Positions 562 through 7,277 of a stretch of DNA of 64,000 bases are shown one piece after another. Numbering within the stretch: the stretch's first letter is position 1; the number at the start of each line of letters is the position of its first letter. The position numbers and the translations under genes were made by a program. Location: positions 187,781 through 251,780 of the IMG/VR virus record IMGVR_UViG_3300049048_000052; one strand, written 5' to 3'. The notes below the pieces were generated by a model. That model had not been told where the DNA came from. It worked only from the letters and a program-made list of their open reading frames with translations, and searched no databases.

Positions 562-635
562 GCGCCTGTAGCTCAGTTGGTTAGAGCGCCGAACTCATAA
601 TTCGGATGTCCCTGGTTCGAATCCAGGCTGGCGCA
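562..635 (+). tRNA. tRNA with CAT anticodon (tRNA-Ile2 favoured, elongator tRNA-Met possible); CCA not encoded
   Basis: Cloverleaf: acceptor GCGCCTG/CTGGCGC (one mismatch), D arm GCTC..GAGC, anticodon arm CCGAA-CTCATAA-TTCGG, T arm CCTGG-TTCGAAT-CCAGG, A73; no initiator features. Confidence 0.95.
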
Positions 636-655
636 TTGAGTCTCCGCTAAGGCTC

Positions 656-676
656 ATGGGGACCTTAGGTCCCCAT
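656..676 (+). promoter_or_regulatory. GC-rich hairpin between the tRNA and the RNA ligase RBS
   Basis: Perfect inverted repeat ATGGGGACC-TTA-GGTCCCCAT, followed by AAGGAGG. Confidence 0.6.
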
Positions 677-696
677 TAATAATTAAGGAGGTAACT

Positions 697-4149: not shown

Positions 4150-4526
4150 GGGTATATCATGGTACAGATCAAGAGCTAACCCATATAAAGAAGGGTAGCT
4201 ATGTAACCCCCTTTCTACATGCAGCTAGACTATGGGGAGTTAAATGGAGCTATGAGCAGTTAATCTCAATAGATCCTAACAAAGTAGGAGAAACATTAAG
4301 ATTCCGTGCGCAGGCTATAGAATCCAGTCCCCTATTTGTGTATGTCAATGAGTTAGATGAGACTCAATTAGAGAAGACTACAACTAATCAGGATGTCCTC
4401 TATCCTTACATATATAAGACCAGGTTAGACCTATGGTTCAAAGAGGAAGAAAGATGGAGTGACTGGAAACTAGTTATTCCTTATTATGAGCGTCAGGATA
4501 GATATGGATACACACAATACCAATAG
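4146..4526 (+). CDS. Hypothetical protein, possible ADP-ribosyltransferase-like fold
   Basis: N-terminal YHGT followed by GSYVT..LHAA. Confidence 0.45.
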   Translation: MRVYHGTDQELTHIKKGSYVTPFLHAARLWGVKWSYEQLISIDPNKVGETLRFRAQAIESSPLFVYVNELDETQLEKTTTNQDVLYPYIYKTRLDLWFKEEERWSDWKLVIPYYERQDRYGYTQYQ

Positions 4527-5217
4527 GACTAGAAACATATTCTATGACACTGAGTTCATAGAAAGGGGCCCTGATTACCCCCTAACCCTTATCAGCATAG
4601 GTATGGTAGATGATGATGGTAGAACCTTCTATAGGGTCTCCTCTGAGTTTAGGGAGGAGGACTGTAATGATTGGGTTAAGGCTAACGTACTACCTTACCT
4701 GGGTCCTACTCACCCTTGTAGTAGAGCTGAGATAGCTCATGATCTAATGGAGTTCATAGGGGCTGATAAGCCTAGGTGGTATGGTTATTACTCTGCCTAT
4801 GACCATGTGCTCCTATGCCAACTCTTTGGTACTATGATAGAGCTTCCCAAGGGGTGGCCTATGTATACTAGGGACATTAAGCAAATGTTGGATTCCATCG
4901 GCAATCCAGAGGTGCCTAAGGACTTCAATGGAGTACTCCATAACGCTCTTGAGGATGCTCTATGGAATAAGAAGGTATACGAATGGCTATTAGGTCTAGG
5001 CTGTATAGAATCTAATGCTAGTCATAGGGATCGTATGGAACGCCTGTTATATGATATGAAGCTGGACTATAATAACCCCGAGCTAGTCCAATATTCCGGG
5101 TATGAAAATACGGATAATATAATCCTCTTAGGTAATGGAAGAGGCTACAGAGGTTTTACTGCAGAGTTCTTCTTTAATCCAGATGGATCCTTCGACCATC
5201 ATGGAATATGGGAATAG
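4486..5217 (+). CDS. DEDDh 3'-5' exo(ribo)nuclease (Rv2179c-like) with C-terminal extension
   Basis: FYDTEF, LISIGMV, SAYDHV and HNALEDA motifs. Confidence 0.88.
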   Translation: MSVRIDMDTHNTNRTRNIFYDTEFIERGPDYPLTLISIGMVDDDGRTFYRVSSEFREEDCNDWVKANVLPYLGPTHPCSRAEIAHDLMEFIGADKPRWYGYYSAYDHVLLCQLFGTMIELPKGWPMYTRDIKQMLDSIGNPEVPKDFNGVLHNALEDALWNKKVYEWLLGLGCIESNASHRDRMERLLYDMKLDYNNPELVQYSGYENTDNIILLGNGRGYRGFTAEFFFNPDGSFDHHGIWE

Positions 5218-5238
5218 GTTAATTGATTATATAAAATA

Positions 5239-5278
5239 CCCCGGCCTGGTATAGGGAGTTCGATTCTCCTACCGGGGA
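5239..5278 (+). ncRNA. tRNA-like minihelix (acceptor stem + T arm; no D or anticodon arm)
   Basis: CCCCGGC-CTGGTATA-GGGAG-TTCGATT-CTCCT-ACCGGGG-A. Confidence 0.55.
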
Positions 5279-5329
5279 CTTTGGGAGTCCCATCTCCCTC
5301 CTATTGATTTCATAGATAATAAGGATACT

Positions 5330-6517
5330 ATGCTATCAAACAGATTTATGACCGAACCACTATTTATAAGTATACTGGGCCCTGCGGGGGTCGGTAAGTC
5401 GTTTACGGTTAATGAGAAGCTTAAAGAGGATCCATCCTACTGTATGAGGACCAGTACCACTGGTATATCAGCAGTGAACCTAGGAGGGGGTGCCATGACT
5501 ATTAACTCAGCCCTCAAATATTTTAATACTAAGCAGCTACTAATGAAGGTAGCCAATAAAGAAATAGATAGTATTCTGAAGAAGATCAGTGAGAGATTCA
5601 GGTACATAGTTATAGATGAGTGCTCTATGTTAGATGCCGCTCAGGTGGACCTTATATATACTGCTATATGTAGATTTAATGCTCAGAATAGAAAGAGGAA
5701 GTTAGGACTATATCTAACTGGTGATAGTGGTCAGTTGCCTGCTGTAAGTGGTAAGCCCTTCTTTGAGGCTAGATACTGGAATGCCTTTCATGTCTCATAT
5801 CTAACTGAGGTAAAGAGACAGAGTGATAAGGACTTTATTAAGGCATTACAACTAGTGAGAGCAGGTAGGCCCGAGGAGGCTGTAGACTGGTTTGAGGAGA
5901 ACATAGGATTCCATAGTTCTATTGATGAGGACTTTGAGGGCTCCACTTTCTTCTCTATGAATGCTGAGGTGGATACCTATAACTTTAGGAAGCTCACTGA
6001 GTTAGAGGGCGTATCCAAGAAGTATGTAGCCCTAATAGAGGGTACACCTATGGCTGTGTGGAAGGACATACCTAAGTATGTTGAACTAAAGAAGGGCGCC
6101 CTCATTACTATCCTTATCAATAACATTGAGCAGGGTTATGCCAATGGTGATATGGCCATCGTCCAGGAGACCTTTGACACCTGTATCCTAGTTAAGCTAC
6201 TGAGAACTAAGAGGCAGGTATACATCCATTATCATGGTGTAAATAATGTGCCCCTAGGTCAATATAAACCTGTAGGTTCTATCAGTTACTTACCAGTTAG
6301 ATTATCGTGGGCCAGCACTATTCATAAGAGTCAGTCTCTGAGTCTAGATGCAGTACAGATTAAGTTAGGTGGTGAGTTCCTAGAGAGATTAAGTGGTGGT
6401 TTATATACTGCTCTATCTAGAGTAAGGACAAAGGAAGGCCTACGCATAGTAGGTAATAGAGAATCGTTTATACAAAGTTGTTACGTTGATCCTAGATACA
6501 TTCCATATATTAAATAG
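5330..6517 (+). CDS. PIF1/RecD-like SF1B DNA helicase
   Basis: Walker A GPAGVGKS, IVIDECSM, GDSGQLP, KRQ, TIHKSQS and YTALSRV. Confidence 0.92.
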   Translation: MLSNRFMTEPLFISILGPAGVGKSFTVNEKLKEDPSYCMRTSTTGISAVNLGGGAMTINSALKYFNTKQLLMKVANKEIDSILKKISERFRYIVIDECSMLDAAQVDLIYTAICRFNAQNRKRKLGLYLTGDSGQLPAVSGKPFFEARYWNAFHVSYLTEVKRQSDKDFIKALQLVRAGRPEEAVDWFEENIGFHSSIDEDFEGSTFFSMNAEVDTYNFRKLTELEGVSKKYVALIEGTPMAVWKDIPKYVELKKGALITILINNIEQGYANGDMAIVQETFDTCILVKLLRTKRQVYIHYHGVNNVPLGQYKPVGSISYLPVRLSWASTIHKSQSLSLDAVQIKLGGEFLERLSGGLYTALSRVRTKEGLRIVGNRESFIQSCYVDPRYIPYIK

Positions 6518-6527
6518 GTATAGATAA

Positions 6528-7277
6528 ATGAGTAACTTACAGGACCTCTACAGGGAAATGGATAATAAAGTGAAGAATATGAATGAGCTCAAAACAGAGT
6601 TCTCTGAGCTTATGTTCTTTGTTGATTACCCAGAGATAGATACGGTTCACTTCTATTGTGAATATGAATACAACGATCAGGGTGGTACTTATCCTGTGTT
6701 TAGGATAAACACAGTAGAAATACATGATGAGCAAAGAAGGGCTCAGTTCCTCAACCGTATGGGTTATCCAGATACTGATATGGAGGAATGGTTAGAGGAG
6801 GAAGGCAGCTATGAGTTTGGTTATATATTAGGTAGATATATTGAAAGCCATGCGGATGAATATGGCGAGGGCTCCTTACATAATGATAGGGAAACTCTAG
6901 GAGAGCGTTGTCTAAGTCTGGCTCAGAGAATGAGTGAAGCTATAGGCTCATCCAATATCCCTATCGTATATATAGTAGAAGAAGTCATAGTTAACTATGA
7001 TGATTCCTACTATAGATTAGCAGAGGGTCATCAGGCTGACTCTGTATTCCTAGATAAGAAAGCAGCAGAGAAGAAAGCAGAGCAATGTGCCCTCTATATC
7101 CTTAAGGAATATGGTGATGACATAGAGTACATTGAGGATCATATCACCTGGCCTAGTGACTATATGTACCTAGGAGCTGATAAGCTTGTACAGGATATAT
7201 TAGATGGTACTTTAGGTATTGATAGAGTGGGATATAGCTCCCTTGCTAAAGTGAGGGAAATAAAAATAGAAGGTTAA
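6528..7277 (+). CDS. Acidic hypothetical protein; N-terminal half belongs to paralog family C
   Basis: FFVDYPEI...YNDQGG motif shared with ORFs at 7983, 8387 and 8817. Confidence 0.8.
   Translation: MSNLQDLYREMDNKVKNMNELKTEFSELMFFVDYPEIDTVHFYCEYEYNDQGGTYPVFRINTVEIHDEQRRAQFLNRMGYPDTDMEEWLEEEGSYEFGYILGRYIESHADEYGEGSLHNDRETLGERCLSLAQRMSEAIGSSNIPIVYIVEEVIVNYDDSYYRLAEGHQADSVFLDKKAAEKKAEQCALYILKEYGDDIEYIEDHITWPSDYMYLGADKLVQDILDGTLGIDRVGYSSLAKVREIKIEG

What the first reader, a model, noticed from the sequence alone, without database searches (positions are those of the whole stretch)
5239..5278. 40-nt tRNA minihelix: acceptor stem and T arm without D or anticodon arms
Seen: 7-bp acceptor CCCCGGC/ACCGGGG (one mismatch) plus discriminator A, and a canonical T arm GGGAG-TTCGATT-CTCCT in exact tRNA register. 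The two halves are joined by only 8 nt (CTGGTATA) that retain a D-loop-like TGGTA. It is intergenic and flanked by two ATTGATT motifs. Known: the acceptor/T-arm coaxial stack is the minimal substrate for RNase P, RNase Z and the CCA-adding enzyme. Inference: it could be an mRNA-processing signal in front of the helicase, an anticodon-less decoy or aminoacylatable RNA, or a cleanly deleted tRNA relic.
Basis: partly seen in the sequence, partly recalled or inferred. Interest (0 to 1): 0.65.

Follow-up and report, generated by a model that had tools for sequence, protein, structure and literature searches.

The report
Anticodon-less tRNA stub in jumbo phage
A 40-base stretch between two genes of a 252-kb soil phage folds like the top half of a tRNA, but it sits in a 55-base insertion that the nearest relative lacks, so it is most likely a truncated copy of a phage tRNA-like gene that host tRNA-cutting enzymes may still recognise, not a proven new RNA.

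Summary
The sequence is as described: CCCCGGC / 8-nt linker / GGGAG-TTCGATT-CTCCT / ACCGGGG / A at 5239-5278. It lies in the 112-nt gap between a DEDD 3'-5' exonuclease gene and a Dda-like helicase gene.

It is more than chance. A T arm plus a six-pair acceptor in register is expected 0.01 times per shuffled genome. T-arm motifs occur 33 times on the + strand and never on the - strand.

It is not a tRNA: there is no D or anticodon arm, and ARAGORN and Rfam do not call it.

The decisive result is comparative. The only close relative found, a fragment with 61% identical exonuclease, keeps the flanks, the next hairpin and the ATTGATT motif. It lacks exactly about 55 nt (5226-5280). More distant relatives have abutting genes. 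The element is therefore a single-copy, lineage-specific insertion.

Its best match in the genome is an anticodon-less tRNA-like scaffold at genome 103982-104146, which shares GCCTGGTAT and the AUA-T-arm-ACC.GG block.

There is no integrase and no matching host tRNA, so attP is rejected. No RNA data exist.

Best reading: a truncated tRNA-like relic. If transcribed, it would be cut like a plant-mitochondrial t-element, but selection for that is unproven. Interest is moderate. The genome's other odd tRNA-like loci are more striking.

The parts
4486..5217 (+). Upstream gene: DEDD 3'-5' exonuclease (Rv2179c-like / RNase T-like). Its stop codon is TAG at 5215-5217.
   Evidence: Pfam PF16473 at 1.6e-12 and phrog_2259 at 1.8e-46.
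5222..5228 (+). First ATTGATT copy. It is part of GTTAATTGATTATAT, a 15-mer that recurs at genome 184566.
   Evidence: The motif occurs 54 times on + and 20 on -, mostly 0-45 nt before start codons.
5226..5280 (+). The ~55-nt stretch that the sister phage lacks (boundaries uncertain by a few nt). It holds an AT-rich leader plus the minihelix.
   Evidence: Pairwise alignment A1 shows a single clean 55-column gap between well-conserved flanks.
5239..5245 (+). Acceptor 5' strand CCCCGGC (register A).
5244..5250 (+). Alternative acceptor 5' strand GCCTGGT (register B). Together with 5251-5252 it forms GCCTGGTAT, identical to the first 9 nt of the tRNA-like scaffold at genome 103982.
5246..5253 (+). 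8-nt linker CTGGTATA. In register B the linker is ATA, 5251-5253.
5254..5270 (+). T arm GGGAG-TTCGATT-CTCCT. It is 17/17 identical to the T arm of an annotated tRNA-Gly of Streptomyces phage Coruscant.
5271..5278 (+). Acceptor 3' strand ACCGGGG plus discriminator A. No CCA is encoded; CTTT follows.
5283..5298 (+). Hairpin GGGAG-TCCCAT-CTCCC, conserved in the sister phage with its stem register shifted by one base (GGAGG-CCCAT-CCTCC). It is not part of the insertion. It may end the upstream transcript.
   Evidence: (z -2.65).
5303..5309 (+). Second ATTGATT copy, conserved in the sister phage and followed by the conserved ATAGATAATA.GGATA.
5330..6517 (+). Downstream gene: Dda-like / PIF1-like SF1 helicase. 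Its AAGGA ribosome-binding site is at 5321-5325.
   Evidence: phrog_325 at 2.7e-54 and PF13604/PF05970.
562..635 (+). Context only: the one canonical tRNA of the window, tRNA-Met(CAT). It lies between same-strand ORFs, next to an RNA ligase gene (697-1332).

Best explanation
The element is a tRNA-derived stub: acceptor stem stacked on a T arm, with no D arm and no anticodon arm. It entered this phage lineage as part of a ~55-nt insertion into the spacer after the exonuclease gene. Most likely it is an internally deleted copy of one of the phage's own tRNA-like genes. The closest one is the anticodon-less scaffold at genome 103982-104146. Removing that scaffold's D hairpin and long stem between two short AU(A) repeats would leave GCCUGGU-AUA-T arm-ACC.GG., which is what stands here. 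The element lies on the coding strand inside a tight same-strand gene array, upstream of the conserved hairpin, so it is probably transcribed with the exonuclease operon. It keeps what RNase P, 3'-end processing enzymes and the CCA-adding enzyme measure: a stacked helix of about 12 bp capped by a T-loop. The expected consequence is that host enzymes cut it out. That would separate the exonuclease mRNA from its 3' hairpin, as plant-mitochondrial t-elements do. Shown here: the sequence anatomy, the non-random occurrence, the insertion status, the single copy, and the absence of integrase and of a host-tRNA match. Inferred: origin by deletion, transcription, cleavage. Whether the cleavage is selected for is unknown. 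I lean towards a recent, tolerated relic.
For: - Anatomy and statistics.
- ARAGORN and Rfam do not call it a tRNA.
- The sister fragment L005 has the same exonuclease (61% identity), intergenic region and helicase N-terminus. It shows a clean 55-nt gap at 5226-5280 and conserved flanks.
- In relatives with 56-58% identical helicase, the gene upstream of the helicase overlaps or abuts it. That gene is an exonuclease in L010 and L011; in L012 it gave no exonuclease match. No RNA element is present.
- 35 more distant exonuclease loci hold no same-strand T arm.
- Single copy in the genome.
- The best in-genome match of the 3' block (4 nt + T arm + acceptor + discriminator) is the 104122 T arm at 21/29. 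That same locus begins with the identical 9-mer GCCTGGTAT and has AUA before its T arm.
- All database hits of the 3' two-thirds fall in annotated phage tRNA genes.
- tRNA genes in this phage are interspersed with same-strand ORFs, so RNase P processing of mRNA-tRNA co-transcripts is routine here.
- Literature: bacterial RNase P cleaves minimal helices (PMC6614837). tRNA-like t-elements direct RNase P and RNase Z cuts in mRNAs (PMC1920247). RNase P acts on polycistronic mRNAs and on the phage P1/P7 C4 RNA precursor (references in PMC4919922).
Against: - There are no RNA data, so neither transcription nor cleavage is shown.
- The deletion origin needs the 3' acceptor strand to differ at 2 of 7 positions, and the T stem at 2-3 pairs, from the proposed parent. 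That parent is only marginally the best match (21/29 against 20/29 and 19/29).
- The T-arm stem GGGAG/CTCC equals the stem of the neighbouring conserved hairpin. The T arm aligns 16/21 with the sister's hairpin region (shuffle p about 0.006-0.02). A local duplication origin is therefore not excluded.
- No full-length donor tRNA with this acceptor and T arm was found anywhere.
- The structure is perfectly intact, which could also mean it is maintained by selection.
- Only one informative close relative exists, from a roughly 1x SISPA assembly.
Confidence: 0.5

Rival explanations
1. It is a selected RNA 'punctuation' signal, a phage t-element. The minihelix is kept because RNase P and RNase Z cleavage there sets the 3' end of the exonuclease operon mRNA, uncouples it from the helicase transcript, or releases a small stable RNA.
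For: The minihelix has every feature the processing enzymes need and no decay. The same genome holds other anticodon-less tRNA-shaped modules in intergenic spacers: a scaffold with a nested tRNA-Arg, and permuted-looking units. All lie on the coding strand. There is precedent in plant mitochondria (PMC1920247).
Against: The element is absent from the sister phage, which keeps the rest of the spacer, and from all more distant relatives. It is single-copy. No covariation data and no RNA data exist.
Confidence: 0.2
2. It is not tRNA-derived. A local duplication of the conserved spacer hairpin (GGGAG-TCCCAT-CTCCC) acquired an outer GC clamp, and its loop drifted into TTCGATT. On this reading the tRNA likeness is convergent or accidental.
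For: The stem is identical to that of the hairpin 29 nt downstream. Ungapped identity of the two 29-nt units is 17/29 (counted by eye). Local alignment to the sister hairpin is 16/21, p 0.006-0.02. Only two substitutions and a 1-nt insertion turn TCCCAT into TTCGATT. ATTGATT is also duplicated.
Against: This reading needs several coordinated changes: the loop, two new mutually complementary GC-rich arms, and exact 7+5 register. T-arm 5' strands are commonly purine-rich, so sharing GGGAG is not rare. The GCCTGGTAT and AUA match to a tRNA-like locus is left unexplained. The p-values are uncorrected.
Confidence: 0.15
3. It is an attP-type core, a copy of the 3' end of a host tRNA gene used for site-specific integration.
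For: Phage attP sites often copy T-arm and acceptor 3' halves of host tRNAs (general knowledge).
Against: The 252-kb genome, complete by CheckV, has no tyrosine integrase and no serine recombinase. No bacterial or archaeal genome, among one from each of 185,579 species, has the 22 specified bases of this T arm and acceptor. An attP core would not need the 5' acceptor strand.
Confidence: 0.02
4. It is an aminoacylatable or decoy minihelix that acts on a synthetase, on EF-Tu or on a tRNA-targeting defence nuclease.
For: Minihelices can be charged by some synthetases (PMC9976931 reviews this). The phage invests heavily in tRNA biology, with more than 25 tRNA-like genes and an RNA ligase.
Against: No acceptor identity set is recognisable. 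It has C1-G72, C3-G70 and A73, with no G3.U70 and no G-1. It has no anticodon loop for anticodon nucleases. No CCA is encoded and the phage has no CCA-adding enzyme. It is not conserved.
Confidence: 0.03
5. It is pure coincidence in an intergenic GC-rich hairpin.
For: Folding energy is not exceptional (z about -0.8).
Against: The expectation is 0.01 per genome. T arms show an extreme strand bias of 33 to 0. The sequence matches tRNA 3' halves.
Confidence: 0.05

Closest known systems
Plant-mitochondrial t-elements (tRNA-like processing signals; Forner et al. 2007, PMC1920247)
   Same: Both have a non-canonical tRNA-like fold built around the GTTCRANYC T-arm motif and an acceptor-like stem. Both are embedded in protein-coding transcripts between or beside genes. 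Both are expected to be recognised by RNase P at the 5' side and by RNase Z at the discriminator.
   Different: t-elements have mapped RNA ends and in-vitro cleavage; nothing is mapped here. Most t-elements keep a partial cloverleaf, whereas this is the bare acceptor/T-arm helix with an 8-nt (or 3-nt) bulge. The host system is a bacteriophage, and the element is not conserved even in the sister phage.
Truncated tRNA genes / tRNA pseudogene fragments in phage and bacterial genomes
   Same: It is derived from tRNA sequence, lacks an anticodon, is not called by tRNA finders, is single-copy and is lineage-specific.
   Different: Ordinary fragments are 5' or 3' pieces, for instance att-site duplicates. 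Here both acceptor strands and the whole T arm survive in exact register, so the stub is still a structurally complete minihelix.
Synthetic tRNA minihelices (model substrates of RNase P, CCA-adding enzyme and some aminoacyl-tRNA synthetases; PMC6614837, PMC9976931)
   Same: The architecture is the same: a 7-bp acceptor stacked on a 5-bp T stem, a 7-nt T-loop and a single discriminator base.
   Different: Those are laboratory constructs, usually without a bulge and with 3' RCCA. This one is natural, has a 5'-side bulge, a C7.A66 mismatch and no encoded CCA.
tRNA-like domain of tmRNA
   Same: Both have an acceptor stem and a T arm with a reduced D region and no anticodon arm. The phage also encodes a permuted tmRNA-like gene.
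   Different: It has no G3.U70 alanine identity, no helix 2, no tag reading frame, and no Rfam or ARAGORN tmRNA signal at this site.

Membership tests
Canonical tRNA gene | 7-bp acceptor stem with a discriminator base | tested here: met
   Six G-C pairs plus C7.A66, and A73.
Canonical tRNA gene | T arm: 5-bp stem, G53-C61, T-loop TTCRANN | tested here: met
   GGGAG-TTCGATT-CTCCT.
Canonical tRNA gene | D arm and anticodon arm with an anticodon | tested here: not met
   Only 8 nt join the acceptor and the T arm.
Canonical tRNA gene | Recognised by ARAGORN or by the Rfam tRNA model RF00005 | tested here: not met
   ARAGORN gives no call. Rfam gives no hit at E<=10 on 4900-5600. It is not among the 25 RF00005 matches at E<=10 in the genome.
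t-element-like RNA processing signal | tRNA-like acceptor/T-arm fold containing the conserved T-arm motif | tested here: met
   The motif criterion is as used in PMC1920247.
t-element-like RNA processing signal | Lies within a transcript, on the sense strand next to coding regions | tested here: inconclusive
   It is on the same strand as all flanking ORFs, and no sigma-70 promoter or intrinsic terminator is predicted between the exonuclease gene and it. Transcription itself is not observed.
t-element-like RNA processing signal | RNA 5'/3' ends coincide with the element's borders; cleavage by RNase P / RNase Z | not testable with these tools
   Only DNA runs (soil metagenomes) hold the sequence.
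t-element-like RNA processing signal | Conservation or covariation among relatives | tested here: not met
   Absent from the sister L005 and from L010-L012. The copies in a second study are identical, so they are uninformative.
attP core copied from a host tRNA | Identity to the 3' part of a host tRNA gene | tested here: not met
   The pattern of 22 specified bases gives 0 matches among one genome from each of 185,579 species. The two metagenome hits are an unrelated GC-rich organism with a different 3' strand.
attP core copied from a host tRNA | Phage-encoded integrase | tested here: not met
   PF00589 and PF00239 are absent from the complete genome.
tmRNA tRNA-like domain | G3.U70 pair, helix 2 and a tag reading frame | tested here: not met
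   It has C3-G70 and gives no tmRNA call here.
Intrinsic terminator | GC-rich hairpin followed by a U tract | tested here: not met
   ACUUUGGG follows the stem, and the terminator scan does not list it.

The most novel reading that the evidence does not exclude
The minihelix is the smallest member of a set of anticodon-less, tRNA-shaped modules that this jumbo phage places in intergenic spacers. The others are a scaffold whose 'anticodon arm' is a 16-bp stem enclosing a whole tRNA-Arg, and units in which the T arm and 3' acceptor strand precede their own 5' acceptor strand and D arm. On this reading the phage uses them as cut sites for host RNase P and RNase Z to punctuate polycistronic RNA. 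That would be a phage counterpart of mitochondrial tRNA punctuation and t-elements.
Probability: 0.15. Interest if true: 0.7.

Novelty: new member of a known kind. Interest (0 to 1): 0.4.

Why it matters
If the stub is cut in vivo, a natural acceptor/T-arm minihelix would be shown to be enough to recruit tRNA-processing enzymes to a bacteriophage mRNA. That is known from model substrates and from plant mitochondria, but not from phages. It would give a simple, portable RNA-processing tag. If it is only a relic, it is still a clean snapshot of how tRNA-like genes are gained, nested and trimmed in a jumbo phage that carries about 30 tRNA-like loci. It also points to more unusual loci in the same genome that deserve their own study.

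Tried and rejected
- Megablast and blastn of 4400-6600 against GenBank phages gave only an 89-nt match inside the exonuclease gene.
- The helicase protein found no close IMG/VR relative.
- Exact and degenerate patterns for the T arm plus acceptor found nothing in IMG/VR or in one genome from each of 185,579 species. A pattern for a full-length donor tRNA also found nothing.
- The JGI metagenome scan gave two hits from one unrelated GC-rich organism.
- A looser minihelix pattern found four IMG/VR loci (L015-L018). L016, L017 and L018 share no protein similarity with this phage (tblastx). L015 was not compared, but it is GC-rich and the match lies in a dense tRNA cluster. The folds of L015, L016 and L018 are not convincing, and about one chance match is expected by my own rough estimate. 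I do not count these loci as homologues.
- Rfam on the site and on the whole window found only tRNA-Met.
- No sigma-70 promoter or intrinsic terminator is predicted in the spacer.
- blastn-short of the spacer against the genome found no second copy of the minihelix.
- 10-11-mer echoes of CCTGGTATAG elsewhere are coding-region coincidences.
- ARAGORN on artificially rejoined halves of the 'permuted' units called a tRNA at almost any junction, so it was uninformative.
- TAG recoding was checked because of the CTA-anticodon tRNA and rejected: TAG ends 49 of 137 long + frames.
- The sequencing-run search found DNA-only soil metagenomes. The second study holds identical 151-nt pieces, so there is no variation and no expression data.
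- Exonuclease neighbourhoods in 35 distant IMG/VR phages hold no same-strand T arm.

Full report
**Setting.** The window is the last 64 kb (187781-251780, + strand) of a 251,780-bp IMG/VR virus record with 42.6% G+C. CheckV rates it complete. Sequencing runs place it in soil metagenomes. A second, independent study holds identical 151-nt pieces, one of which covers 5247-5397. The phage is rich in tRNA biology. ARAGORN finds 20 tRNAs and a permuted tmRNA-like gene. RF00005 gives 25 matches at E<=10. Group I introns interrupt some tRNA genes. Within the window there is one canonical tRNA-Met at 562-635, next to an RNA ligase gene.

**The observation.** It reads CCCCGGC (5239-5245), CTGGTATA, GGGAG-TTCGATT-CTCCT (5254-5270), ACCGGGG (5271-5277) and A (5278). 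The acceptor has six contiguous G-C pairs plus a C7.A66 mismatch. The T stem has five pairs, one of them G.U. The T-loop is canonical with G53-C61, and the 3' acceptor strand abuts the T stem. The element fills part of the 112-nt spacer between a DEDD 3'-5' exonuclease gene (4486-5217; PF16473, phrog_2259) and a Dda/PIF1-like helicase gene (5330-6517). ATTGATT flanks it at 5222 and 5303.

Thermodynamic stability alone is unremarkable, with z about -0.8. The tRNA register is not. In 300 shuffled genomes, a T arm is expected 1.09 times on both strands together. Observed are 33 on + and 0 on -. A T arm with six Watson-Crick acceptor pairs in register within 20 nt is expected 0.01 times and is seen once, here. 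The 3' two-thirds of the element hits only annotated tRNA genes in GenBank phages. Its T arm is 17/17 identical to that of a Streptomyces-phage tRNA-Gly. So the element is tRNA-like by sequence as well as by shape.

It is not a tRNA. It has no D or anticodon arm, and ARAGORN and Rfam give no call. A second pairing register exists: GCCTGGT at 5244-5250 pairs with ACCGGGG and leaves the linker ATA.

**Comparative evidence.** No close relative exists in GenBank phages or in IMG/VR. Protein word searches found one informative relative, from ENA sample ERZ1744926. Fragment L005 carries the orthologous exonuclease (61% identity over the full length, including the C-terminal extension), then a spacer, then the helicase N-terminus.

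The pairwise alignment (A1) is clear. The end of the exonuclease gene, TTAATT, the hairpin, TATTGA(T)T, ATAGATAATA.GGATA and the first helicase codons are all conserved. A single gap of 55 columns removes window 5226-5280, which is the AT-rich leader plus the whole minihelix. The neighbouring hairpin (GGGAG-TCCCAT-CTCCC at 5283-5298) is kept in the sister as GGAGG-CCCAT-CCTCC. Its stem register is shifted by one base, but both strands still pair.

In relatives with 56-58% identical helicase (L010, L011, L012), the gene upstream of the helicase overlaps it or ends 9 nt before it. That gene is an exonuclease in L010 and L011. In L012 it gave no exonuclease match at E<=1e-5. None has a spacer RNA. 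Thirty-five more distant exonuclease loci hold no same-strand T arm. By parsimony, the minihelix is a derived, lineage-specific insertion. It is single-copy in the genome.

**Where it came from.** Among the 32 other T arms of the genome, I compared the block of 4 nt, T arm, acceptor 3' strand and discriminator. The minihelix matches best the T arm at genome 104122, at 21/29. The next best scores are 20 and 19. That T arm belongs to a 165-nt locus, 103982-104146. This locus begins with GCCTGGTAT, the same 9-mer as window 5244-5252.

The locus folds into a cloverleaf-like shape (z -4.65). It has a 7-bp acceptor, a D hairpin, a 16-bp stem in place of the anticodon arm that encloses the complete tRNA-Arg(CCT), then AUA, then the T arm. 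Deleting everything between the acceptor 5' strand and that AUA gives GCCUGGU-AUA-T arm-ACC.GG., which is the register-B reading of the minihelix. The deleted stretch is bounded by AU/AUA microhomology.

I therefore infer that the stub is an internally deleted paralogue of such a scaffold. This is not proven. The 3' strand differs at 2 of 7 positions and the T stem at 2-3 pairs, and the margin over other tRNAs is small.

A rival origin cannot be excluded. The T-arm stem equals the stem of the conserved hairpin 29 nt downstream. The T arm with its 5' TATA aligns 16/21 with the sister's hairpin region (p 0.006-0.02, uncorrected). A local duplication that drifted into a T-loop is therefore possible. 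It needs more coordinated changes, and it leaves the GCCTGGTAT match unexplained.

**What it probably does.** All flanking genes are on the + strand and tightly packed. No sigma-70 promoter or intrinsic terminator is predicted between the exonuclease stop codon and the element. The conserved hairpin that may end the upstream transcript lies downstream of it. The stub is thus most likely in the 3' untranslated part of the exonuclease operon RNA.

tRNA genes in this phage are routinely embedded between same-strand ORFs. Host RNase P and 3' processing therefore already act on its mRNAs. Bacterial RNase P cleaves even shorter helices than this one (PMC6614837). tRNA-like t-elements direct RNase P and RNase Z cuts that create mRNA ends in plant mitochondria (PMC1920247). 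RNase P also cuts polycistronic mRNAs and the phage P1/P7 C4 RNA precursor (references in PMC4919922).

The expected behaviour is excision of a 40-nt RNA. That would sever the exonuclease mRNA from its 3' hairpin. Whether this is selected for is open. The perfect structure argues for selection, or for a recent origin. Absence from the sister, which keeps every other spacer feature, argues that the element is dispensable.

**Rejected readings.**
- attP core: the phage has no tyrosine or serine recombinase, and no species-representative genome carries this T arm and acceptor.
- Chargeable RNA or decoy: no acceptor identity set is recognisable (C3-G70, no G-1), the phage has no CCA-adding enzyme, and there is no anticodon loop.
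- Ro60/Y-RNA-like module: the phage has no TROVE protein.
- Terminator: there is no U tract.
- ATTGATT is not specific to this element. It is a genome-wide motif, 54 on + against 20 on -, lying 0-45 nt before start codons.

**Verdict.** The best reading is a truncated tRNA-like relic that probably still works as an RNase P / RNase Z cut site. A selected 'phage t-element' has about 0.2 probability.

Noticed in passing
outside the window: genome G000:C1:103982-104146 (L008:8983-9147): A 165-nt cloverleaf-like element. It has acceptor GCCTGGT/ACCAGGC, a D hairpin and a T arm. In place of an anticodon arm it has a 16-bp stem that encloses the complete tRNA-Arg(CCT) (104025-104096). MFE is -61.3 kcal/mol and z is -4.65. 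It is a tRNA nested inside an anticodon-less tRNA-like scaffold, and I know of no described counterpart.
   Followed up: partly
outside the window: genome 96299-96640 and 102044-102100 (L008:1300-1640, 7045-7100): A T arm plus a 3' acceptor strand is followed, not preceded, by its perfectly complementary 5' acceptor strand, TA and a D-arm-like segment. Examples are CCTTCCC-A-TATAT-GGGAAGG-TAGTCCAACTGGTAGAG and CCAGGCC-G-53 nt-GGCCTGG-TAGACTAGAGG. This is the layout of circularly permuted tRNA genes. Unit 1 folds with an open 'anticodon stem' made from its two ends. Fold z-scores are weak, and the ARAGORN test was uninformative. A literature search found no paper that describes permuted tRNA genes in bacteriophages.
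   Followed up: partly
outside the window: genome 132310-132626: A phage-encoded permuted (two-piece type) tmRNA-like gene lies directly after a tRNA-Met. ARAGORN calls it a permuted tmRNA with tag ATNNIVPFSRVSSIVV. Rfam scores tmRNA_permuted at 45 bits and cyano_tmRNA at 43 bits, both below their gathering scores. A helicase homologue in a Calothrix assembly is a second weak hint of a cyanobacterial host.
   Followed up: no
whole genome; window copies at 2185, 5222, 5303, 7939, 11677, 13258, 13802, 15112: ATTGATT, often TATTGATTG, occurs 54 times on + and 20 times on -. It mostly lies 0-45 nt upstream of start codons, often directly before the Shine-Dalgarno sequence and sometimes in tandem. 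It is conserved upstream of the helicase in the sister phage. It is likely a phage regulatory, promoter or processing motif.
   Followed up: partly
outside the window: genome 130487-130728, 120479-121155, 164510-164742, 676-968(-), 179772-180031: Group I intron matches. Two lie just upstream of T arms (130776, 121194), which suggests intron-interrupted tRNA genes. RF00005 also matches a 172-nt tRNA with an insert of about 100 nt at 112396-112567.
   Followed up: no
outside the window: genome 50858-50929: A tRNA with anticodon CTA, which would read UAG. TAG is nevertheless a common terminator (49 of 137 long + strand frames), and only 2 internal TAGs are flanked by long open stretches. There is no sign of stop-codon recoding.
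   Followed up: yes
L005:2380-2500 and L003:3680-4000 (relatives); corresponds to window ~5395: The helicase P-loop (GVGK|S) is an insertion hot spot in relatives. L005 has an intein-like ORF continuation, and L003 has a non-coding insert of about 310 nt that splits the gene. Other homologues carry intein or LAGLIDADG Pfam domains. The ends of L005 and L002 carry the SISPA primer GTTTCCCAGTCACGAT, so contig ends from that sample are artificial.
   Followed up: no
window 636-680: After tRNA-Met comes a perfect hairpin GGGGACC-TTA-GGTCCCC, then the RBS of an RNA ligase gene (697-1332; PF09414). This is another case of a tRNA embedded in a same-strand gene array.
   Followed up: no
L018:3174-3218(-) and L016:1209-1266(-) (unrelated IMG/VR phages): Other intergenic elements of the form CCCCGG...T-loop...CCGGGG, 45-60 nt long, that lack an anticodon arm. 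L018 even shares CCCCGGC/ACCGGGG with the same C.A mismatch. The search pattern pre-selected these features, and the phages share no proteins with this one. Truncated tRNA-like stubs may be more common in phages than annotated.
   Followed up: partly
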